A stretch of DNA of 54,829 nt, counting the filler, from Sluysia triapertura (taxonomy: Eukaryota): NCBI GenBank assembly GCA_046118255.1. It is 4 parts of 4 records of this genome, joined end to end, with 100 filler letters (N's around TTAATTAATTAA, not from the genome) between each part and the next. Parts side by side here need not be neighbours in the genome. Positions count along the whole stretch, not along the records: positions 43,380 to 54,829 come from JBJNIA010184601.1; 3 more parts are not named here. One strand, written 5' to 3'. The position numbers and the translations under genes were made by a program. The notes under the pieces are model-generated. The model was not told the DNA's origin and ran no database searches. It saw only the letters and a list, made by a program, of their open reading frames with translations. Below, in pieces: positions 43,380-54,829 of this stretch (its first letter is position 1; each line of letters begins with the position of its first letter).

Positions 43380-44621
43380 TTGTACTTTTTTACTTTTAAA
43401 TTAAGCATTTTAATTTAATTAATTTTTTATTTGAATTAACTTTTATTAGATTATTAGTTTTATAATTATTTTTCTATTTAAACAAATAATTAATAATTTA
43501 ATTATTATGATCCAAAATTTTCAGAATTTCTTTAAAAATATTGATATTTACACTTCATTTATATACACTTCTCACAGTAATCTTAAAAAATTTTATTTAT
43601 TCTTTATTTGGACCCACACATCAATTTTAAAAATTTTTCGATTTCTTTATCTGGTTCACTTGGAATTCAATTGACACATCAATCTTAAAATTTTCTAATT
43701 CCGTGGATTTTGATTGATTACACAGATAAACATTTGGTTTACTCGTTAATTTTTTTATATTAAGTTCGCAAAATCAACTTTAAATCGCTAATTTTATTTT
43801 GATCGCCTTTTTAATTTGGGAGACGAAAAAATTAAACTAAATCTTTAAATTTGATTATATTAATCTGGTAATATATTATATTATACTTAATATTTTATAT
43901 AAATTTTCGCTATTTTTTACTTGAAAATTATACGTAGGGTGCGCCGATTTTACTCGGTCGTAAAATCCACTAAAAATATTAAAAGACGATTTAAAACACC
44001 GTATTTTCTATATGGTAGTAAACCTCGACGTAAATTCTCATCTATTAAATTCTAACTGATTATTGACTTTGCACTGCATAAAATAGTTGACCATTTAAAA
44101 ATCATTACTTACCTCCATTTACTGTTTTCTTTTGTTTGCTACTTACAACTTAGCCCTTAAGTGAGTAAGACTAAGATTGTAAGGGACTCACCACATAAAT
44201 TAAGAAAACAATAACACAAAACTTTTCTGCACTGAAATTATAATGCTTTTATATTAATTTAAAATGAAAAAGCATAGAATTAATATAAATTTAGTAATAA
44301 TCAATTTTAAATTGAAATTATATAAACAATCATTTTAAAATGAGATTCTACGAAGACAATATGAAATTAAAATTTATAAACGTCAAACTTTACTATTATA
44401 ATCAATAAATCATTTTAAAATAAGAATCAATAATATGAAATCAAACTTTAAGAAGATAAAATTCGACTAAAATTATCTTACAAACATGATTTAGAATATT
44501 ATATGGAAGATAAAGTCATACTAGATTGAGATTAAATAGAACTAGTATATAATCAAAAATTAATAATAAAATTAACTTAAATTAAAAATTTGATATAATA
44601 AACAAAAGTTATGCAAAAGCG

Positions 44622-44692
44622 TTAATAATAATAATAAATTAATTTATATTGCGCTCATATCTACTGCAAAGTACTCAAAAGCGCTTGAGGTA
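44622..44692 (-). mobile_element. Short L2 3'-tail fragment
   Basis: TTGCGCT(C/T)ATATCTACTGCAAAGTA shared with ~16328-16352, next to an AAT-repeat tail. Confidence 0.7.
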
Positions 44693-45148
44693 AATCATTC
44701 ACCATATTTCTGAAAAAGAAATAATTTTGCCTTTTTCTTAAACTCTAAATAAACAATTTTTACTAAAAATGTTTTAATTTTAAACACTTTTACAATCAAA
44801 TGGTTCTAATTAAAATTATAAAAAAGTTTCTTCATCAATATTTAAAACATTTACTTGATTGCAACATTTATTTAATAAATCGAAATGCAAAATACTGAAT
44901 TATCTTTAAGGCCATGCATGCCAAATAAGTTGATGAATGAAAGATCAAAATCATACGCAATTAATTTTTTCCAAAACATTAAAGATCCAAGTTTTTTAAT
45001 TAATTATTTTATTATCAAGAATCAATTTTAGCAGTTATTGTTTTAGTCAAGATATTAATAGCATCTTATTTACTATGAGAATCAATATTATTATTTGATA
45101 TGCAGACAAAATTCAACAAAGAAATTTAGATAACTATTAATATCTAAC

Positions 45149-45873
45149 TTGATTTTGCCAGATAATCAATTGAAGGTTTGGGATTATCACGAGATGTTGT
45201 TTTGATTATGTGGACTTTACCAAGCTCATTGCTTCGTAAAACATTATAAACTTTCATAATGGAAGGGTCGAAACGGCTAAATAATAAAATATCAAAATAA
45301 CTACAGTGTCGCAAAATTCTATATTCCGTTTAAACAAAATAAAAAATCGTGAAATTAATAGTTAAAAGCAATAGATATTATTCAAATAAAAGGCTTCGGG
45401 TTTATAATATTAAAACTGCATTAAATTAATTAAAATTTTCATATATCGAATTAAAAATTACCGATTTAGGGAGCAATGTAACGGTAAATTAAGTTTTGCT
45501 GCTACATCATAACATTTGATTGTGCCTTCCACTGATGAAGATATTGGTTTTTCACAAAATACAGCCTTTCCTGTAAAAATTAATGACACTACTAATACTA
45601 ACCATAATTTAACGATTGGATTATCAACTTTTCGTGAGAATCTGTATAAGTGCATATGATTACACCATCTAATTCGGGATCCTGTAAAATTCTGTCTAAT
45701 TCATCAGCAGTTAAAAATTTTATGTTATTAAATGTTTTTTGTAATTCTATAAGTTTTTCTTTATCTATATCAATAGCATAAGCCAAAGTTGCTCTTGCTG
45801 AATTAAGAATATTCTTCAGGTGTATTGTTCCAGCCCTTCCTATTCCAACTAAAGCTAATTTATAAAGTTTCAT
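45149..45873 (-). CDS. Gfo/Idh/MocA oxidoreductase, myo-inositol 2-dehydrogenase-like, first three exons
   Basis: Exons 45873-45603, 45570-45462 and 45276-45149. Rossmann LVGIGRAGTIH, GKAVFCEKP, LNRRFDP, IIKTTSRDNPKP. Later exons not identified. Confidence 0.9.
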
Positions 45874-46189
45874 AATTAATTACAAATGGTGGTTATGTTT
45901 CTTAAATTGAAAATAAAAGCTTATATACTCTTACTGTAACCTTGAAATTATATTTACTAATGTATTACTAATCAGCATTATTTTAAGAATAAAGTAACTT
46001 ATGTTATGAAATACTTAAGATTTAAAAATCAACAGATGATATATACATAATTTAAATTTCATCTTTAACTGCAAAATAACAAGATTTTGACTTAAAAATT
46101 TTATAATTAATTTTAAATAAATCTTCAGTTCTATTAATTTTTTAAACAAATCTTCAAGTATTTTACCTTAAATTATAGCGATTATATCA

Positions 46190-47345
46190 GAAGCAACGAA
46201 CCCATGGCACGGGAAAATTTTTTGACGCGAGAAAAATATAAATTATAATATGAAATAATATTAAAATTGAGGATGAATTTAACATATATTCATGAATTTT
46301 GTTTTTATTTTTGACCTTCAAATACGCATCCAAGAAAAAACAAGTTATTCGTTGATCAAAAAGTATGAAATGTTACTTAAAGAAGATAATATTCTAAGTG
46401 CTTCATTTCCAGTTCTTTAATATGCAGACATATTGAAACCAACATGCAGTCTTAGAAAAAGCAATGAAAAACAGTTAATTTCAAAGTAACTCTATAATTC
46501 TACAGAAATATTATGGATTTAACAAAAATTAATCATGAAAACGAAGATGAAACAATTGAATTTGACATTAAAAATATAACTTATTATTATCTAATAAGTT
46601 TACTAATTTCAAGAAATACAAGATGTTATCTAAGTTAAAATATTATAAAACTTGTATAACAAAAATAATGAAACAATTAAAAGCAAAATATAAAGATATT
46701 AATGATTGAGTAGATAGTGGTCAATATAAATTAATTATAAACAAACAGATCAGTAGGGCTGCAGATAAAGAAGAATTTAAAATAATTGTGGTTTACATTA
46801 TATTTCAATCTGACAAAGTAAAATACTGACCACAATCAAGATAGATAAGATTATAGATTTTGTCAATAAGTAAATTAAACTTATTGTAAAAATATAATAA
46901 GAAGAAAAGAAAATCAGAATCCTAATAAACCATATAATATATTGGAAATTTATTTGACAATATTAAAATACTGAGTATAGCCATACCTAAAATATGTAAT
47001 TCCACAAATAATATGCTTTTTGTAGTAATATTGTTGGCCATGTTCGGCATAAATAAAAATAGTGCAAAAAAAGCGTTAGATTGTAAGCAACAAAAATAGG
47101 AAGAAAATTTTCTTTATTAGATACTTAAAATCGTCCAGTATCAAAACTTAAACGAATTAAGACAAAAGACACAAAAATTTAAAATCTTTATCTTAGTGAC
47201 GGCATCAGTGAGAGAGTATATTGTACTGTAGTCATTACAGTCGCTTTTCAATAACTGAATTGTTAAACGTTTTAAAAATCTTTCAAGATATTGTCCGACC
47301 AATGTTGAGATGCTTTTGAAACTGGATATATAAGTTTAAATAAAA
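46190..47345 (+). mobile_element. Heavily decayed hAT transposase remnant
   Basis: SERVY (~47207) and PTNVEMLLKL (~47295) resemble the hAT C-terminal dimerisation domain; left boundary uncertain. Confidence 0.4.
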
Positions 47346-47406
47346 TAGATAAATTAAGAATAAAGAATAATGAGAAAATGTTTTATAATATTAGAACTGC
47401 AGGTAT

Positions 47407-48000
47407 TGTATTGTCAAGGTGTTGCAGGAGTTTCTATTGAAAGCTTAAAAATTCTTATTCTTAACTGCAAGTTATCTGAGGAGTCGGTTTGCCTCTATAT
47501 TGAAGACGTACTATTGGGATTTTTATGACTTAACTTAATTATAACTTAACTTAATTAACTTTAGATAAAACTCTTTACTTATAACTTACGTCTTATCTGA
47601 CGATGTCTAATTAATTTATGATACAACCTTTTACGAGGTGTTGTCTAATTGAAATTATACATTTTATAATTGCGCAATCCGTATTAAGGAATTTCTCGCA
47701 AGAGACATTAGTATTTTAGAAGATTAAGCAACCCTTGTTAAGGTGTTGCTTGACAAAACGAATTTTAAAAGTTTATTAAATTAAAAACTCTAATATTCTT
47801 AAAGTATATTATCCACAAAGACTAATCAAAAATTCGTGAAAGATTAAGACTATAATAATGATAATAATTTAGTTAACTACTGAACCTCTGTTAGCAGTTT
47901 TAGAAAATTTTAAATAAGTTTCGCAATCCGTATTAAAGTGTTGCATGAAATAAAAAAGATTTTAAGTCAAAGTTATGTTTCCTATTAAAGTGAAACAAAA
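47407..48000 (-). repeat. Candidate 3' LTR of the Gypsy-like element
   Basis: Minus-strand end reads ...ACAATACA; minus-strand TATA-like at ~47495; internal repeats CGCAATCCGTATTAA (x2) and GTGTTG (x4). No partner LTR in the window. Confidence 0.35.
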
Positions 48001-48618
48001 GCCTTATATAAAAATTAATTACTTGTATTGCATGGAATAAATAAATAATAAATAAAGAAATTATTTTAAATAATTAACTTGCTTTAAACAATAATTTATA
48101 TTTTAAACAATAATTAAAAATTTTGATTTTTTTAAATAAATTTTTTAATTTTTTAATTTTATAATTTTTACTTTAATTTTCTTAAATAAATTTTTAATTT
48201 TTGATTTTATTTTTTAATAATTTTTTACTATTATTTAATTTTCTTTTTTTAATAATATTAATTTTTTATTTCTGGGATTCCATGTTAATTTAATATTTAA
48301 TAATTAATTTATATTCTAAAATAATTACATTCTGACACTAAAACAATTTATTCTGACATTACAAAACTTTATAATTTAAATTAATACAAATTATAATCCA
48401 CATTAATAATCATTAATAATATTTACAAAATTTAATAATCATTAATAGTATATCAACAATCATTAATCATTAATATTATTTACAATTTACTTCACTGTTA
48501 GGGAAAATTCGTCCCGAATCATAAAAGCATTGCTGTAAAAATATAATAAGATATAAGGATCATAATAAATCATAAAATGTAAGGATCACGTAAAAAAGTT
48601 ACTAGTTAGATGTAAGTG

Positions 48619-50519
48619 TTAGTTTGAATCGTATATGTCGATATCGGATGCGTCACTACAGGACGTTGGATCTGCTGGGCTGCTCATAGATTGATAACGA
48701 TACTTCTTGTAAGTTTTGAATGTCGTATTATGCCCAAATGGGACGTTAGTAGGTTTGGGAGAATGTTAGTAGTCTGGTACTGCTTTTATGAGTTTAGACG
48801 GTATTGTTGTCAATGATGACGACGACGATGATGATGTTAGCGCGGCATTGCGTAGCGTACTTTTTTGTTGTGACGATGTTGATAATGGCATTGACATTGA
48901 TTCTGATGGAGCCACGAAAGTATCTTTAGACTTAGAAGGCGTAGAGAAAAGTAGGGGAGGAGGAAGAGAGAAGTTCGGTATAAAAGTTAGATCTTTCTCA
49001 CGGATTAGATCCAGTAAAGACATCCACGAGCAGATCATACGAGGCGGTATCGGATATAGCAGTCTAAAAGTTAGTCTTCCCCTTAAAATAGCATTATCGG
49101 TTGTATAAAACAAAAGATTATTATTTGTAAGATTAATTAACGCTTTAAGCCAACTGAACGGTAGATTAAGATCTTTAATAATAAGACACGGGTTCAAAGA
49201 CACCGTGATCTTATCGTGCAGATGTCCTAACAGAAAGTGGCGGACATCATCAATATCTTTAGTGTCGGAGATATCTGAGTCTTTGATCTCCTGAATGTAT
49301 CTTACGAAGTTTTTGATACGTAATTGAGGTTTTATATTTATGTCGGTGTGATATTGTTTAGAATATGGGACGCAAGATATTTTTGTAATATGAGGACGGT
49401 TCAAGAAATCAAAAACGTATGAATAAGCTATGAAAACTAATCGGTCCTCATCATAAGCAGACATAGGCGGAACATGTGTAAAAGAAGTTTCGTTCTGCCA
49501 ACACGCCGTATTAGCAACATCGTCCTTATAAAGATTAGGGAAGAAGGATTGAAAGGAAGAAGGTGGCAAGGGATAAAGAAAAGCAATTGATGTGGGGCTT
49601 CTACTACTATATTACATTTTTTATAGATATTAGTGACATTCAATGAAGAAAAACTGTGGAAACTGGTTGTAAAAGGTACCCCGCTGTTTATTACGACACC
49701 TCGTGCCACAACTAAATATAAGGAGTTTATGGATTCAGGAACTTGAGAAAGGCCGTCTAGTCACACAAAAAGAGAGTTGGAAGTTAACGCGAAGATATGC
49801 GTGGCTAAATTGATATCTAATTCTGATTTAAGACTATTGGGGGTTTCAACAGAACAAGAAAAGAAGGCAGGGATGATACTTTCGTGGCAATACTTGTCCA
49901 TATATACATAAAAAGTTTTTTGTTGGTTGACTAACTTCGCTTGAATATGGCTATAAAGGAAGAAGGAAACGTAAAACCATACATGAAAATTTTAAATAAG
50001 TAAGCTATTAATTTATTATATTATTTTATTCTTAAATAATAAATATAATTAGGTAATTTTAGAACACCCTATCTTTTCTTCAAAAAAGGATTAATAGGCT
50101 ATGAGGATGTTGGCAATTGCGTCTCTTTTTCCTTATAAAAGTGTTTTAATTGACGCCTTCTTTTATTGCGTCTTTGTGATTTAGACAAGTTTTTTGGAAA
50201 ATTTGGGGGAGGTCTTACCTACCCTTTCCTACTAAAGTTTTTTCTTTTAATAATTGACGCCGGTTGATAAATATCAATTCCGGGCCCCTCGGAAGCATCC
50301 GTTATATACTTAACGGTAAAGGCATAAGAACGTGCGTTTATAGTAGATATCGCACTCAATGATGGTTGTTCCGCATAGTGGGCAAACAGGTAAATGTGAA
50401 GGCGAAGATTCAAAAAGGCTGTATAGACAGAAAAAATGGAAGCGGTGAAAACATGGAGAAGTTTTTGCAAAATACTTTGGAATGGAGCGGAGATAAACAG
50501 CGCAGGTAGAATATGACAC
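48619..50519 (-). pseudogene. Two-exon orphan gene, decayed, probably cargo of the Gypsy-like element
   Basis: Intron 50222-49951 (GTAGGT...ttccttcttcctttatag) joins FSRKG|HIQAKLVNQQKTFYVYMDKYCHE in frame. Two frameshifts and two premature stops; Ser/Pro-rich tail ending DIDIYDSN*. Confidence 0.6.
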
Positions 50520-50800
50520 TGTCTAACCGCAAAGAAAATATGTAATAAGATGATAAATGAGTATTAATAAAAATATTAAAAATCCTAAACCTAAATAAAA
50601 GTTAAATAATATTTTAGTTTGTGAATGACTCGAGATGGATGGTACACTATCACATACAGTCATTTACACGATCATTACTATTTCTAATAACAAATTTAAT
50701 ATTTATCCTTATGATTTTTATATTACACATGACCCAAGTTGAATGGGAGTACCATTACAAATGGCCAATTGTGTAATGTGTATTAAATTTTACATAAAAT

Positions 50801-53328
50801 CTAAATGAAAAAATGGGCCCTATACCTAATGAATAAGTAGAATTTTGGGATAATAAAGTTAATCATTAATGTTATTAAGGAAATTGTTATTAAAATGTAA
50901 TTAAAAGTTATGATGAAATTATTGATGGATTTCATTAGAGCTGGGAACTCAATATTATTTTTACTTATACTCATACTTATATTTGTAGCATTCGAACTCA
51001 TATTCATATTCCTGTTATAAGACATTCGTAAAATTGTTATTGATTTTTAGCGTTTTCTCTGATTTCGTATTGTTAGACTTCGTAAAATGGACTGACCGTG
51101 GATCGAACCCGGAACCTCTCGCTGCGCTATCACTGAGCTATCAGCCCCGTCTAACGATTTTATTTTATTATAGTCAATTTTACCAAATGGCACTTTAGGC
51201 CTATTACCCCAACAGTATACGAATCGTTTTCGTACTTATCAATAACTGGTACTTGCACATCATGATGTCTGATCGTTGGCCAAAATCATTCCATATTTCT
51301 TAATATCCAAAACTTGATAAACATGAGTTTATTATTCGGAATATGATATAAGCGAATAGTATCGTTAGGCAATATCATTCCGTAACGTAAACCGACAGAC
51401 AATTCATATGCAATTATTAATGTATTACTATATAATGGATTATTGATACGTACGATATTTTCTAGATAACGATAGATACCCATTGGAAATTCAATTGATG
51501 TCGATGATTGTTGAACAACAAATGACTTAGTTCTAATATTATATGTCGGTGATTATTGAAAAGTAAATAGTTTAGTCCTTATTTTATAGTATCGTATTAA
51601 AATAGTCTTTGAGTCACTTTGAGAATCATATTCTCATTCTATAGTTATCGTTACACTAATTAATTGATATTCAGCAAGATCAATGCAAGATATAAACCAG
51701 TAGAAATCTTGTTTACTTGCTCTTATTTCGGTTTCACATCAATCCATTATACAACATTTTATTTGGACAGAAAATAAATTAATCTGATCTATTAATATTC
51801 TAGCGTAAATGTCTTTTTGAGTAGATACCAAAATTATCTTAAGCGAAGTATTTCTTGAGAAGTAATTCGTGCTTGATATACAAGATAGATAGGTGCATAT
51901 TAAGATGGTTGATTTTACTTGAGTCATTTGCCAATTTCCATATATAAGTGGAACTTGATTATTTGTAGCGTATTCATAAATTGGAGGTAGAAGTATCGTC
52001 ATATCCGGTGGAGTGTAATTATTTCGATGTGGTATTGTATATGCATCGTCGTCATCATTGTAATTGTTATACGGTATTTATTTGATACAAACATAATAAT
52101 CGTTAATAATACTATAGCAAGAGCAATTCCGAACAATATTACTGATATTATTAGTATTACCAATGCTGGATTATTCCGTAGTGTTTCTAATATTGTTAAG
52201 TGTTTCCTGGTTCCTTTAAATGCAAAATGCAAATATTTTGATGAATGCCGAATTTTCACAATAATATGTCTATCCTCGATAGGTAGTATGTTTGAACATA
52301 CTGTGGCTGGATATCTCAAGTCATTATCAATATAGTTTTCGTATATGGTCCATGAACTAAAATTAAGTCTGGCAAGTTTTAAACAGGCAACTTTGGCATG
52401 AATATTTTGATTCAATATTCTAACCCTTATTTCATTATCTCTATTATAAAAGTCAAAATGTTCTATTTTAAAAGAATGCTCATGGCATGGAATTACCGTA
52501 TCTATTGTAATTAAAATCAACGGTATAAGATTTTTATTATTTGTAGGAACTCGTACTGCCCTATTAATTTGAAACAAATAAAGTATGGTCCAAAGTGTAT
52601 ACAGTACCATGAAGATTAATAACATTATAAAGAATTTATAAGAGTGTTCCATGGTATCTTTGGTAGTCGAAATTTTTGAAGTGCATATCTGTTTCTTAGC
52701 TGTATTATAATTAAGCAATGTTGTTGGTACCTCTGTTGTTTTTCTATGTTCCAATTGTTTTACGTTTTCGATAAATTTCCAAATATCTGTGTATTTCTTT
52801 TGGTATTTAGAGAAAAGGTTATTAACATGGGTATGTAACCATAATGCAAAAAATGCGAAAAACCGTTTATATGATGTGGTAATGACTTTAAATAAATACA
52901 GTAGATTTCGAATTCATGTCTTAGTTTCATTTTCTTGGAAATAAATTCGAATTTCCAGTGTTGATTGTAGATATCAGTAATCATTATCAGTAGCCATGAT
53001 TTATAGCAATATTTATATTTTTGTATTCTTCATCCGTCTCCGTTGCCATAGCGTTAGTTACTAGTGATAGAATAATCATAATTAATACATATATCCAATA
53101 AGTTAGTTTCTTAAAACAATTTCTATTGAAACCATTTCTATTCTTTATATTGGTCATTATCATTATTGTGTCTTGAGCTTCAGAGCCAATACTTGATGAG
53201 TCCGGACTTTCCTCTGATGTAACTGTTGATGGTGATCCCCATGATACATCCGACATTTGAAGTTTAGATACAACGACATCGGGTAATGGTAAATCTGGAA
53301 ATTGTAATAGTGGATTCAAATTTGGCAT
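50801..53328 (-). pseudogene. Env-position multi-transmembrane polyprotein, disrupted by frameshifts, stops and an insertion
   Basis: Contiguous same-strand ORF pieces with repeated hydrophobic segments (YWIYVLIMIILSLV; FFIMLLIFMVLYTLW; LVILIISVILFGIALAIVLL; ILITISLITLMINFII) separated by hydrophilic domains with NxS/T sequons. Confidence 0.7.
51071..51214 (-). mobile_element. tRNA-containing solo-LTR-like element with GTAT target-site duplication
   Basis: TGTT...AACA termini with GTAT on both flanks; tRNA-like 51147-51088 with box A, box B and TTTT; inserted in the membrane-protein ORF. Confidence 0.9.
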
Positions 53329-53379
53329 TTAATGTAAGGTTAGTTCATCACCGACTGTGAAACTAGTAGTTGAGGTATA

Positions 53380-53700
53380 ATCATATTTGACCCTGGTTAT
53401 AAAACCATATTTAATGTGAATGACCATATCTTTTAATTTATTAATGACATCCATACCTAATATTAATTCGTACGGGCTACTATCCCAAACGTTTACTAAA
53501 ACTTGTACATATTGTCCTACTACTTATATATAGCACAATATAGTTCCGTTGATATTTATGGGTGTTTGATTAACATTATATGTTATTGTTCTTGATCCAT
53601 TTATAAATACTAAATCCCAACTAGTCAAAAAATTTTTATGAACTACTGATATAGTACCGCCGGTATCAACAATTGAGCTAACCCATCGCCTAGGTTATCT
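53380..53700 (-). pseudogene. Retropepsin-like aspartic protease downstream of integrase
   Basis: SSIVDTGGTISVV (DTG at 53667-53659), flap-like TYNVNQTPINING, and PYELILGMDVI (ILGMD 53463-53449); one internal stop. Confidence 0.85.
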
Positions 53701-53759
53701 CTATGAAGATGTATCATAAATATTACTTGTTTATGTCGTAGTGCATGAATTGAAGGCGG

Positions 53760-54590
53760 TTTGTCTCGATCTTTAAGTCTGGATTTAATTTTCAAGTTTG
53801 ATTTTTGTACTTTCCTATTTCTCAGATTATATTCTTCTTTTGGTGCACTCTTACACCTATTGATGTGTACTACAAATTAATTTTATTAGGATCTTTAACG
53901 AACACATTTGTATCAGTAACTTTTGTTATAAAATAAGGCCCTTTAAAAGGTTTATGTAACTTAGGTGATTGACCAGGTTTAGTTATTGGATAATCTATCA
54001 ATAATTCGTCACCTATTTTAAAAGTATGTTTTTGGCTGTCCTATAGTATATTTCTTGAGAATACTTAATTTGAAGACCTGCTCGTTTCCATGCGTCATGT
54101 AATGATTCCACCATTGTAGTCACATACTCTGGAATCTCTAAGTATTGTGAAGTTGGAGGAACCCATTCTAAATCTACTGTCATATTAGAGTGTCTACCAT
54201 ACTAAATAAAATGGAGTAAAATTAGTAGATTGATGTACGGAACTTCTCTACGCAAAAAGACATGGTGGGATGTATAAATCCCAATCAGATTGTCCATCGT
54301 TTACGTAAGATTGAATCATATTTATGAGAGTCCTACTAAAACTTTCCAATAATCCGTCAGTTTGTAAATGGTAAGGTGATATATAAATTCTAAGGATGTT
54401 AAAAATCTTTGCTACAGGTTTAATCACGTCGCTAGTAAAATTAGTACCTTGATCTGTCAGTAATTTTCTAGGAGTTCCATATCCATATATTATCTTTTCT
54501 ACGAGTACCTGTGCTACTGTTTCAGCCTTCTGATTGGGCATCGGATAAGCCTCGGGCCATTTTGTCAAATAATCAGCGAATACAATTGTT
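53760..54590 (-). mobile_element. Ty3/Gypsy integrase (rve core + GPY/F module), decayed
   Basis: DYLTKWPEAYP...LLTDQGTNFTS...PYHLQTDGLLES...WD....LFA, then PKLHKPFKGPYFI and VVHINRCK; stops and frameshifts present. Confidence 0.93.
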
Positions 54591-54829
54591 TGGATTAGTG
54601 AAGGATAAGGGTTGATATAAGGATCAAAACTTAAGATAACAGAATAAGGTGAAAGTTATTAAAAAACTAAGATAAGGCATTATGATGAACTGTAATAGTA
54701 GGATAAGCATATAAAATATTTAAATCAAGATAAAATAATGAGAAATACGAAAAAATAACCCTTTACAAGGTTTTATCTGTTAAAATATTAAAGTACATTT
54801 GTTAATTAATTTAATTATAATTTGTTTAA

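What the first reader, a model, noticed from the sequence alone, without database searches (positions are those of the whole stretch)
47407..54590. Gypsy-like element with an unusual 3' module: integrase, second protease, serial membrane polyprotein, spliced orphan gene, candidate LTR
Seen: about 6 kb of same-strand coding sequence follows a GPY/F-type integrase, with comparable decay throughout and no obvious internal TSD or junction apart from the small tRNA-LTR insertion. Established: Ty3/Gypsy pol order is PR-RT-RH-IN, with at most an env-like ORF downstream in most families; giant cargo-carrying planarian Gypsy elements (Burro) are the precedent to compare against. Inference: this is the 3' half of a large virus-like retroelement with its own processing protease, a set of membrane proteins and an intron-containing accessory gene. 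This is the best candidate in the window for an undescribed system.
Basis: partly seen in the sequence, partly recalled or inferred. Interest (0 to 1): 0.9.

Follow-up and report, generated by a model that had tools for sequence, protein, structure and literature searches.

The report
Decayed tail of Burro-like retroelement
This is a broken, front-truncated remnant of a giant Gypsy-type virus-like element of the already described "Burro-like" kind, and its one fresh detail is an extra protease domain plus a membrane tail after the integrase, which its closest relatives also have.

Summary
All the coding sequence is on the minus strand. A Gypsy-type integrase remnant (core plus GPY/F) lies at 53,870-54,655. 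It is followed, at conserved spacing, by a real retropepsin-like domain (53,332-53,694). Both are broken. Homology to relatives stops at the start of the integrase core, 174 nt inside the piece, so the copy is truncated at its 5' end.

The closest relatives share 55-72% identity in the integrase core. They are single giant ORFs on metagenome contigs, with a mononegavirus-type fusion glycoprotein in frame upstream of PR-RT-RH-IN. That layout is published for planarian Burro elements and for GAG-ENV-POL errantiviruses. Four relatives carry the same protease-after-integrase. All six with long tails after the integrase have strong transmembrane segments, and one has ankyrin repeats.

The window's membrane ORFs (51,739-53,328) fit that tail in position, frame and layout, but not in sequence. 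Further downstream lie a tRNA relic, a broken TM-RING-H2 finger and an intact 267-codon orphan ORF. Whether these belong to the element could not be tested. No LTR could be shown and splicing was not tested.

Verdict: a known kind, a dead copy, one modestly new domain arrangement.

The parts
53870..54655 (-). Integrase remnant: DDE (rve) core plus C-terminal GPY/F module. It is broken: about 4 frameshifts and 1-2 in-frame stops. It is also truncated at its 5' side: no H2C2 zinc finger and nothing of RT/RH upstream.
   Evidence: Pfam rve E 7.3e-7. phmmer gives 72% identity, E 4.8e-46, to P0001. A frameshift-aware alignment to P0001, P0003, P0013 and P0018 gives 44-50% identity, with outer bounds 53,407-54,655 for the whole IN-to-protease span, starting at the relatives' rve start. 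The zinc-finger profile finds nothing in 54,656-54,829.
53332..53694 (-). Retropepsin-like aspartic protease domain after the integrase ('PR2'). It begins about 186 codons after the open integrase-core piece. It is broken by at least one in-frame stop.
   Evidence: D-T-G and the late G-x-D motif are visible in translation. Profiles of relatives' protease domains rank its two pieces first among all fragments of the piece, colinearly (E 1.2e-7 and 8.9e-5). BLASTP of the first piece to P0013 gives E 1e-5. The same domain sits 175-185 aa after the core in P0001, P0003, P0013 and P0018 and is recognised by Pfam there. The pieces alone get no Pfam or PDB hit.
51739..53328 (-). Post-protease 'tail': four head-to-tail ORFs in three frames. 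It includes one uninterrupted 251-codon ORF with the layout TM, about 130 aa, TM. There are three TM-like segments in all. The first ORF is in the same frame as PR2 and starts directly after the stop that ends the PR2 frame.
   Evidence: ORF list and translations. ORF excess: 0 of 200 shuffles reach it; TM-like count: 3 of 200 shuffles reach it. The AF2 model has two long helices but mean pLDDT 52. No homologue was found. Analogy: 6 of 6 long tails after the integrase in relatives have 1-2 strong TM-like segments, and four of them have two segments flanking 220-390 aa.
49570..51738 (-). Middle stretch with a clear minus-strand ORF excess but many interruptions. It holds the tRNA-like relic and the TM-RING relic. 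Its origin is unassigned.
   Evidence: 617 aa lie in open stretches of 60 codons or more, against a mean of 124 in shuffles; 0 of 200 shuffles reach the observed value. Apart from the RING match, its listed minus-strand ORFs of 45 codons or more gave only weak Pfam matches (E above 0.1).
51088..51147 (-). tRNA-like relic: acceptor, D and T arms are present, the anticodon arm is replaced by 5 nt, and a CCA end is encoded.
   Evidence: Rfam tRNA 29.1 bits against a gathering score of 29. ARAGORN finds no tRNA. No flanking LTR-like repeats were found.
50310..50663 (-). Relic of a small TM plus RING-H2 finger protein (RNF24-like layout). A TM-like ORF and a RING ORF lie in the same frame, interrupted once, and one of the eight zinc-ligand positions is not Cys or His.
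   Evidence: Pfam zf-RING_2 E 5.2e-5 (23.9 bits, cut-off 27.3) and zf-C3HC4 21.7 bits (cut-off 21). The best PDB match is RING finger protein 24, E 0.02. No close homologue was found.
48766..49569 (-). Intact 267-codon orphan ORF with a Ser-rich C-terminus. It has the highest G+C (32-38%) and the strongest GC skew of the piece.
   Evidence: ORF list. For the longest open frame, 0 of 200 shuffles reach it. No homologue, not on record, no Pfam hit. AF2 pLDDT 38. Composition.
47407..48765 (.). AT-rich, low-complexity stretch with tandem repeats and a short repeated hairpin-like motif.
   Evidence: G+C falls to 14%. Tandem repeats. Repeated motif; only one copy folds well. There is no partner repeat in the piece.
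54656..54829 (.). Stretch upstream of the integrase core that is not homologous to the relatives. The zinc finger would be expected here. Its last 150 nt have 18% G+C.
45144..45873 (-). Neighbour: the first exons of a Gfo/Idh/MocA oxidoreductase gene with GT-AG introns, one of them about 32 nt. This is taken as host DNA.
   Evidence: Pfam GFO_IDH_MocA E 2e-11 and 3e-4 on two exons. Sequence read.

Best explanation
The stretch is the dead 3' portion of a provirus-like Ty3/Gypsy element. Its lineage encodes one giant polyprotein: gag, then a mononegavirus-type (class III) fusion glycoprotein in frame, then PR-RT-RH-IN. This is the 'Burro-like' or GAG-ENV-POL errantivirus-like kind.

In a sub-group of that lineage, the integrase's GPY/F module is followed at fixed spacing by one more retropepsin-like domain. 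After that comes a fast-evolving tail that carries transmembrane segments, and in one relative ankyrin repeats.

Shown: the integrase, the extra protease, their conserved spacing, and the architecture of the relatives.

Inferred:
- The window's membrane ORFs at 51.7-53.3 kb are this tail.
- In intact relatives the whole is translated as one polyprotein.
- The protease after the integrase either frees the membrane tail from the integrase or supplies a partner for the dimeric viral protease.
- The tail sits in the ER or plasma membrane as an anchor or a small second membrane protein.

The window's copy cannot work. It lacks everything upstream of the integrase core. The integrase has about 4 frameshifts and 1-2 stops. 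The protease has at least one stop. The tail is split over three frames.

The further 3 kb holds the tRNA relic, the TM-RING-H2 relic and the 267-codon ORF. It is either accessory cargo of the element, as Burro and Cer1 have, or flanking DNA. This is unresolved.
For: - Identity of the integrase.
- Colinear alignment from the start of the integrase core through the protease domain to four relatives, with outer bounds 53,407-54,655.
- The protease domain.
- A protease 175-186 aa after the core in P0001, P0003, P0013, P0018 and the window. These are single uninterrupted ORFs on separate metagenome contigs. Pfam recognises the domain in P0013, P0018 and P0003.
- The fusion glycoprotein (Pfam Monjiviricetes_fusion, E 1e-77 to 3e-95; E 2.5e-11 in P0025) lies in frame upstream of PR-RT-RH-IN in P0001, P0022, P0025 and P0087. 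P0025 also has a CCHC knuckle before it.
- Published parallels: Burro has env in frame between gag and pol, with hits to mononegavirus glycoproteins, ankyrin and other cargo domains, accessory ORFs, and decaying fragments in one planarian species (PMC6431247). GAG-ENV-POL errantiviruses occur in Nematoda, Bryozoa and Platyhelminthes (PMC13524379). Cer1 has a lineage-specific ORF after pol (PMC10309623).
- Tails of relatives: 6 of 6 have strong TM-like segments, and P0018 has ankyrin repeats.
- In the window: frame continuity from PR2 into the next ORF, and ORF and TM excess over shuffles.
Against: - The window's tail ORFs, the RING relic and the 267-codon ORF share no detectable sequence similarity with any of the 150 closest relatives or with anything else searched.
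- The relatives' tails are not alike among themselves either, apart from the protease. The 'tail' argument therefore rests on analogy alone.
- No LTR, TSD, PBS or PPT was shown.
- Four close relatives (P0007, P0009, P0010, P0022) have long tails with no detectable protease after the integrase.
- The 48.4-49.9 kb region differs in G+C and GC skew from the integrase region.
- None of the scanned relatives has a RING finger.
- Burro-specific domains (BIR, BCL2, MATH, dUTPase-like) were not seen in the relatives. Membership of Burro proper is therefore not shown.
- The host organism is unknown.
Confidence: 0.6

Rival explanations
1. Only the integrase-protease remnant (53.3-54.66 kb) comes from the element. 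Everything downstream is host or other DNA that merely lies next to a truncated relic: lineage-specific membrane genes or pseudogenes, a TM-RING-H2 pseudogene, a tRNA relic and an orphan gene.
For: - No homology between the downstream ORFs and any relative.
- TM-RING-H2 proteins of the RNF24 type are ordinary host genes.
- A host gene with introns lies on the same strand 3 kb further on.
- Composition shifts at 48.4-49.9 kb.
- No LTR closes the element.
- The 251- and 267-codon ORFs are intact while the integrase is broken about six times.
Against: - The first downstream ORF is in the PR2 frame and starts directly after its stop.
- In relatives that carry the protease after the integrase, the ORF goes on beyond it wherever more is recorded: 100 to over 1,000 aa in P0001, P0013 and P0018; P0003 ends 15-20 aa after its second protease.
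- The TM-loop-TM layout matches the relatives' tails.
- Burro-like elements and Cer1 are known to carry lineage-specific ORFs after pol.
- A protein library of 5.8 billion clusters returned no homologue for the three ORFs searched, within each query's 0.55-1.75-fold length range and given shared 5-residue words.
Confidence: 0.25
2. The membrane ORFs after the protease are the element's env gene, in the canonical gag-pol-env order.
For: The ORFs stand where errantivirus env stands. One has a signal-peptide-like segment, and another has two TM segments flanking a loop. The eLife paper reports gB-type env ectodomains flanked by two TM domains.
Against: - The closest relatives carry their glycoprotein upstream of PR, not after IN.
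- The ORFs match no glycoprotein family in Pfam.
- They show no similarity to the relatives' glycoprotein regions.
- The loop of about 130 aa is far smaller than the roughly 650-position glycoprotein domain.
- The structure model is of low confidence.
Confidence: 0.06
3. The integrase-to-protease junction is an accident of two elements joined by nesting, tandem recombination or deletion.
For: PR2 scores higher with the profile of proteases that stand upstream of RT than with the profile of proteases after the integrase. In P0003, the stretch after the integrase aligns to the PR-PR region that precedes RT in P0001.
Against: The same junction at the same spacing (175-186 aa) occurs in four separate relatives as uninterrupted ORFs. 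There is no room for an LTR or gag between the GPY/F module and the protease. No RT remnant follows the protease.
Confidence: 0.05
4. The downstream ORFs are chance open frames in AT-rich DNA.
For: AT-rich sequence yields Ile/Leu/Phe-rich, TM-looking peptides. The weak 7tm_1 Pfam hit is of that kind.
Against: In each sub-region, 0 of 200 dinucleotide shuffles reach the minus-strand total in open stretches of 60 codons or more. For the longest open frame, none reach it in the tail and orphan sub-regions, but 3 of 200 do in the middle stretch. The plus strand has far less open frame.
Confidence: 0.04

Closest known systems
Burro / GYPSM1 giant Gypsy-like LTR retroelements of planarians (Grohme et al. 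2018; Jurka 2007; reviewed in Arkhipova & Yushenova 2019, PMC6431247)
   Same: The pol is Gypsy-type. The nearest relatives of the window's integrase have a mononegavirus-type env in frame between gag and PR. They encode giant single ORFs, carry cargo domains (ankyrin in P0018), and have long coding regions after the integrase. Decaying fragments with stops and frameshifts are reported in one planarian species. The AT-rich genome with very short introns is compatible with a flatworm (inference).
   Different: The relatives recovered here are 2,300-3,250 aa, not about 4,900 aa. They showed no BIR, BCL2, MATH, SMC or dUTPase-like Pfam hits. A protease domain after the integrase, a TM tail and a TM-RING-H2 unit are not mentioned in the text I could read. 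The window holds only the part from the integrase core onwards. The host is unknown.
GAG-ENV-POL errantivirus-like Ty3/Gypsy elements of Nematoda, Bryozoa and Platyhelminthes (eLife 2026, PMC13524379; Sacco et al. 2022 as cited there)
   Same: In the relatives, the env gene (class III fusogen) stands between gag and pol. In P0001 two TM-like segments bracket most of the glycoprotein match (131-149 and 697-715), in line with that paper's two-TM env layout.
   Different: That paper describes separate ORFs, calls the env gB-type, and does not mention domains after the integrase. Here Pfam's best match is the Monjiviricetes fusion glycoprotein, and the whole is one ORF in the relatives.
Cer1 of Caenorhabditis and its post-pol ORF (CERV C-terminal half; PMC10309623)
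   Same: Cer1 is a Gypsy element with a large, lineage-specific ORF between the integrase and the 3' LTR. That ORF has no homologues elsewhere and is expressed through a spliced mRNA. This is the best functional precedent for an 'orphan, possibly spliced' gene after the integrase.
   Different: There is no sequence similarity. CERV is a nuclear RNA-export factor with no TM segments reported. Cer1 has no protease after the integrase in that description. Splicing in the window is untested.
Retropepsins (Pfam RVP / gag-asp_proteas / Asp_protease_2)
   Same: PR2 has the D-T-G motif and the late G-x-D motif, and it is colinear with profiles of the relatives' protease domains.
   Different: It stands after the integrase instead of before RT. 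It is interrupted in this copy. Its pieces are too short for a Pfam hit on their own.
Small TM + RING-H2 E3 ligases (RNF24/RNF122 type)
   Same: A TM segment is followed by a RING-H2 finger. The best solved-structure match is RNF24.
   Different: The frame is interrupted, one zinc ligand is missing, and the linker is very short. The scores are weak (Pfam at or just below the cut-offs). No close homologue was found.

Membership tests
Ty3/Gypsy (Metaviridae) LTR retroelement | Integrase with a DDE (rve) core | tested here: met
   Pfam rve E 7.3e-7; the 29.8 bits are below the 32.6 cut-off because only two thirds of the domain lie in the open piece. 72% identity to polyproteins that carry RT-RH-IN.
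Ty3/Gypsy (Metaviridae) LTR retroelement | GPY/F module C-terminal to the integrase core | tested here: met
   The motif is visible in translation. The stretch is colinear with the region that Pfam calls Integrase_p58_C or MLVIN_C in relatives. The 43-aa piece itself gets no Pfam hit.
Ty3/Gypsy (Metaviridae) LTR retroelement | pol order PR-RT-RH-IN | not testable with these tools
   Nothing upstream of the integrase core is present in the piece. The order is met in the closest relatives.
Ty3/Gypsy (Metaviridae) LTR retroelement | Paired LTRs with a target-site duplication | tested here: inconclusive
   No long direct repeat was found in 43,380-54,829. Only one end of the element could lie in the piece.
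Burro-like / GAG-ENV-POL errantivirus-like lineage | Viral fusion glycoprotein between gag and PR (in frame in Burro) | not testable with these tools
   That part is absent from the window. It is present in P0001, P0022, P0025 and P0087, which share 46-72% identity in the integrase core.
Burro-like / GAG-ENV-POL errantivirus-like lineage | Giant polyprotein with host-like cargo domains and accessory ORFs | tested here: inconclusive
   The window has about 4.6 kb of ORF-rich sequence after the protease, with a RING-H2 relic. P0018 has ankyrin repeats. No BIR, BCL2, MATH or dUTPase hits were seen in the relatives scanned.
Burro-like / GAG-ENV-POL errantivirus-like lineage | Host is a planarian or other flatworm (or a nematode or bryozoan) | not testable with these tools
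   The relatives come from unnamed metagenome contigs. The piece has 14-38% G+C and a host intron of about 32 nt. These are compatible with such a host but not diagnostic.
Retropepsin | D-T/S-G catalytic motif, late G-x-D motif, and domain-length colinearity with family profiles | tested here: met
Retropepsin | Uninterrupted reading frame | tested here: not met
   There is at least one in-frame stop.
RING-H2 membrane E3 ligase (RNF24-like) | RING finger with all eight zinc ligands | tested here: not met
   Pfam zf-C3HC4 reaches its cut-off (21.7 against 21) but zf-RING_2 does not (23.9 against 27.3). Seven of the eight ligand positions are Cys or His.
RING-H2 membrane E3 ligase (RNF24-like) | TM segment N-terminal to the RING in one open frame | tested here: not met
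   A TM-like ORF lies directly upstream in the same frame but is separated by an interruption.
Viral envelope fusion protein (for the downstream membrane ORFs) | Sequence or fold match to a known fusogen family | tested here: not met
   No Pfam hit. No similarity to the relatives' glycoproteins. AF2 pLDDT is 52, so no meaningful fold search was possible.
Cer1-type post-pol accessory gene | ORF between the integrase and the 3' LTR, expressed from a spliced mRNA | not testable with these tools
   Position: the ORF lies downstream of the integrase, but no 3' LTR was shown, so the 'between' is unproven. Neither expression data nor a gene predictor was available. There is no sequence similarity.

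The most novel reading that the evidence does not exclude
Burro-like proviruses may carry a conserved cassette after the integrase: an extra retropepsin domain, followed by a rapidly evolving membrane-inserted protein (TM-loop-TM). In this copy a TM-RING-H2 ubiquitin-ligase-like unit and an orphan gene would belong to it as well. That would make it a protease-released set of membrane and host-manipulating proteins, distinct from the env that lies upstream of pol.
Probability: 0.2. Interest if true: 0.6.

Novelty: new member of a known kind. Interest (0 to 1): 0.35.

Why it matters
Giant virus-like Gypsy elements that fuse an env and host-like domains into one polyprotein are a rare known case of retroelements collecting cargo. 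The protease domain placed after the integrase is shared by this copy and four metagenomic relatives. So is a membrane tail of conserved layout but unconserved sequence. I found neither described in the papers I could search. If confirmed on full-length copies, they would add a processing-and-membrane module to the picture of how these elements are built. This particular locus is a dead fragment and has no functional weight of its own.

Tried and rejected
- **Homologue searches.** The 267-codon ORF, the 251-codon ORF and the RING ORF gave no hits.
- **Exact look-ups.** Two window ORFs are not on record.
- **Pfam on the protease pieces and the GPY/F piece alone.** No hits.
- **PDB sequence search with the protease pieces.** Only chance-level hits.
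- **AF2 models.** Single-sequence models of the 251- and 267-codon ORFs had pLDDT 52 and 38. Fold searches would be meaningless at that confidence, so none were run.
- **7tm_1 (GPCR) Pfam hit on the 251-codon ORF.** E 7e-4 and below the cut-off. I rejected it as hydrophobic bias, because the ORF has only two TM segments.
- **tRNA.** ARAGORN finds no tRNA. Only Rfam's borderline relic remains.
- **LTR, TSD and inverted-repeat search.** It found only short AT-rich chance matches.
- **Similarity to relatives.** tblastn and phmmer of 150 relatives against the downstream region found nothing below E 0.04, which is chance level given the number of comparisons.
- **Taxon of the relatives.** None carries a usable name. 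One is filed under a Flavobacteriaceae MAG.
- **Literature.** A search for a protease after the integrase in retrotransposons found nothing relevant. Grohme et al. 2018 is not held in the library.
- **Script machine lost.** A count of catalytic motifs across the relatives' protease domains and exact TM coordinates in the window ORFs were not completed.
- **Not built.** No splice model was made. ORFs were searched one by one by reference, and the joined step was left out.

Full report
**Where the coding is.** The piece (43,380-54,829) has no N and is AT-rich, with 14-38% G+C. Almost every long open frame lies on the minus strand. The element therefore reads from high to low coordinates. The finding's coordinates are right, but the orientation has to be stated.

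**Integrase.**
- The open piece of the integrase core matches Pfam rve at E 7e-7.
- In an exhaustive search of 1.84 billion representative proteins, it hits long polyproteins at up to 72% identity (E 5e-46).
- A GPY/F stretch follows in another frame.
- A frameshift-aware alignment, for which I kept only score, counts and outer bounds, is colinear with four relatives. It runs from the first residues of their rve domain through the end of a protease domain. Window bounds are 53,407-54,655 and identity is 44-50%.
- The integrase part has about four frameshifts and one or two in-frame stops.
- A profile covering the H2C2 zinc finger and linker of eight relatives finds nothing in the 174 nt upstream. 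The last 150 of those nt have 18% G+C.
- The copy is therefore cut at the start of the integrase core inside the piece, not by the piece's edge. No RT, RNase H, canonical PR or gag remnant lies anywhere in the piece.

**The second protease is real and is a family trait.**
- The stretch 53,332-53,694 shows D-T-G and the late G-x-D motif.
- Its two pieces get no Pfam or PDB hit on their own.
- However, profiles made from the relatives' protease domains rank them first among all translated fragments of the piece, in colinear order (E 1.2e-7 and 8.9e-5).
- The first piece aligns to P0013's protease across the catalytic motif.
- In P0001, P0003, P0013 and P0018 a protease-like domain begins 175-185 residues after the integrase-core piece. 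In the window the distance is about 186 codons.
- Pfam recognises that domain in P0013 and P0018, and the second of P0003's two post-integrase protease domains.
- These relatives are single uninterrupted ORFs on different metagenome contigs. A local rearrangement therefore does not explain the junction.
- Four other close relatives (P0007, P0009, P0010, P0022) have long tails with no detectable protease. The trait belongs to a sub-group.
- In the window the domain carries at least one in-frame stop.

**What the lineage is.**
- P0001, P0022, P0025 and P0087 carry Pfam's Monjiviricetes fusion glycoprotein in the same ORF, upstream of PR-RT-RH-IN (E 1e-77 to 3e-95; E 2.5e-11 in P0025). P0025 has a CCHC knuckle before it.
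- P0001 and P0009 have two protease domains before RT. P0001 has a third after the integrase.
- P0018 has ankyrin repeats after the integrase and protease.
- This is the published description of planarian Burro/GYPSM1 elements: a giant polyprotein; env in frame between gag and pol, with hits to mononegavirus glycoproteins; ankyrin and other cargo domains; accessory ORFs; and decaying fragments in one species (PMC6431247).
- GAG-ENV-POL errantivirus-like elements are also reported in Nematoda, Bryozoa and Platyhelminthes, with Cer1 sister to a flatworm element (PMC13524379).
- I could not show membership of Burro proper. The relatives are shorter, none of the Burro-specific domains appeared in Pfam scans, and none of the relatives carries a usable organism name.

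**The membrane ORFs.**
- Directly after the stop that ends the PR2 frame, and in the same frame, a 113-codon ORF begins. Three more ORFs follow head to tail in other frames. One of them is an uninterrupted 251-codon ORF with two long hydrophobic helices flanking about 130 residues.
- For ORF content, 0 of 200 dinucleotide shuffles reach the observed value. For TM-like segments, 3 of 200 do.
- None of these ORFs has a homologue anywhere I searched, including the 150 relatives.
- The relatives' tails are also unlike one another, apart from the protease.
- Yet all six tails that extend 450 aa or more beyond the integrase core have one or two strong TM-like segments. In four of them, two segments flank 220-390 residues.
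- I therefore read 51,739-53,328 as the decayed counterpart of that tail. This rests on position, frame and layout, not on homology.
- If it was once a single frame, it is now interrupted at least three times. That is the same order of decay as the integrase.

**Further downstream.**
- From 49,570 to 51,738 the minus strand still has far more open frame than shuffles (0 of 200 reach it).
- This stretch contains a 60-nt tRNA-like relic that lacks the anticodon arm and ends in CCA. No LTR-like repeats lie around it.
The Pfam RING families score at or just below their cut-offs, and RNF24 is the best solved-structure match. The frame is interrupted once and one zinc-ligand position is lost. No close homologue was found.
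- The 267-codon ORF (48,766-49,569) is intact and real. It has no homologue, no Pfam hit and no usable structure model. It lies in the region with the highest G+C and the strongest GC skew of the piece.
- Burro's accessory ORFs and Cer1's post-pol gene show that such cargo is possible. Cer1's gene is lineage-specific and is expressed from a spliced mRNA.
- Nothing I could run ties these three features to the element, however. A TM-RING-H2 gene is also an ordinary host gene type.
- I made no splice model. ORFs were searched one by one, and the joined step was left out.
- The 'candidate LTR' (47,407-48,765) is AT-rich, low-complexity DNA with tandem repeats and a short repeated motif. With no partner in the piece, it cannot be called an LTR.
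- A Gfo/Idh/MocA gene with GT-AG introns starts at 45,873 on the same strand. This bounds the element's possible 3' end.

**Mechanism.** This is inferred from intact relatives, not from this copy. One giant polyprotein is made, and the canonical protease processes it. The protease after the integrase either separates the membrane tail from the integrase or provides an extra partner for the dimeric enzyme. The tail inserts into a membrane through its two hydrophobic segments. The window's copy can do none of this.

- I did not fetch genomic DNA of the relatives by look-up, pattern or locus scan. This was the decisive test of co-occurrence, and it is referred.
- The short domain profiles (about 100-127 positions) that I made in scratch were used only to score fragments. 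Nothing was extracted from them.
- The script machine was lost.

**Verdict.** The kind is known, the copy is dead, and the protease after the integrase with its membrane tail is a modest new detail. It is worth checking on full-length natural copies.

Noticed in passing
window 51088-51147 (-): A tRNA-like relic sits on the element's coding strand. It scores 29.1 bits in Rfam, lacks the anticodon arm, and has an encoded CCA end, which hints at a retro-copied tRNA or a SINE head. ARAGORN does not call it, and no repeats flank it.
   Followed up: partly
It is interrupted and lacks one zinc ligand.
   Followed up: partly
window 47411-47967: A short motif of roughly 22 nt, partly palindromic, recurs four to five times. 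Only the copy at 47,722-47,754 folds into a clearly stable hairpin (z -5.4).
   Followed up: partly
window 45144-45873 (-): First exons of a Gfo/Idh/MocA oxidoreductase gene with GT-AG introns, one of about 32 nt. Such very short introns, together with the AT-richness, would fit a flatworm-like host, but this is inference only.
   Followed up: partly
window 51498-51588 and 48402-48485: Two short tandem repeats: two copies of 45 nt, and about three copies of 29 nt. They lie inside and just after the ORF-rich region.
   Followed up: no
window 48380-49880: G+C rises to 32-38% and the GC skew to +0.21 to +0.23. This is unlike the integrase region (skew near 0) and may mark a unit of different origin.
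   Followed up: no
relative P0022 (NCBI HBK71150.1): A 2,627-aa glycoprotein-PR-RT-RH-IN polyprotein is deposited as a hypothetical protein of a Flavobacteriaceae MAG. It is evidently a eukaryotic retroelement contig binned into a bacterial genome.
   Followed up: no
relatives P0001, P0009, P0003: These relatives have multiple retropepsin-like domains in one ORF: two in tandem before RT in P0001 and P0009, a third after the integrase in P0001, and two after the integrase in P0003. In P0003 that stretch aligns to the PR-PR region that precedes RT in P0001.
   Followed up: partly
relatives P0002, P0015, P0017, P0020, P0039, P0046 and others: More distant hits (31-39% identity) contain two or three integrase cores and repeated pol units in one protein. 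They are probably gene models or ORFs that run through tandem or nested elements.
   Followed up: no
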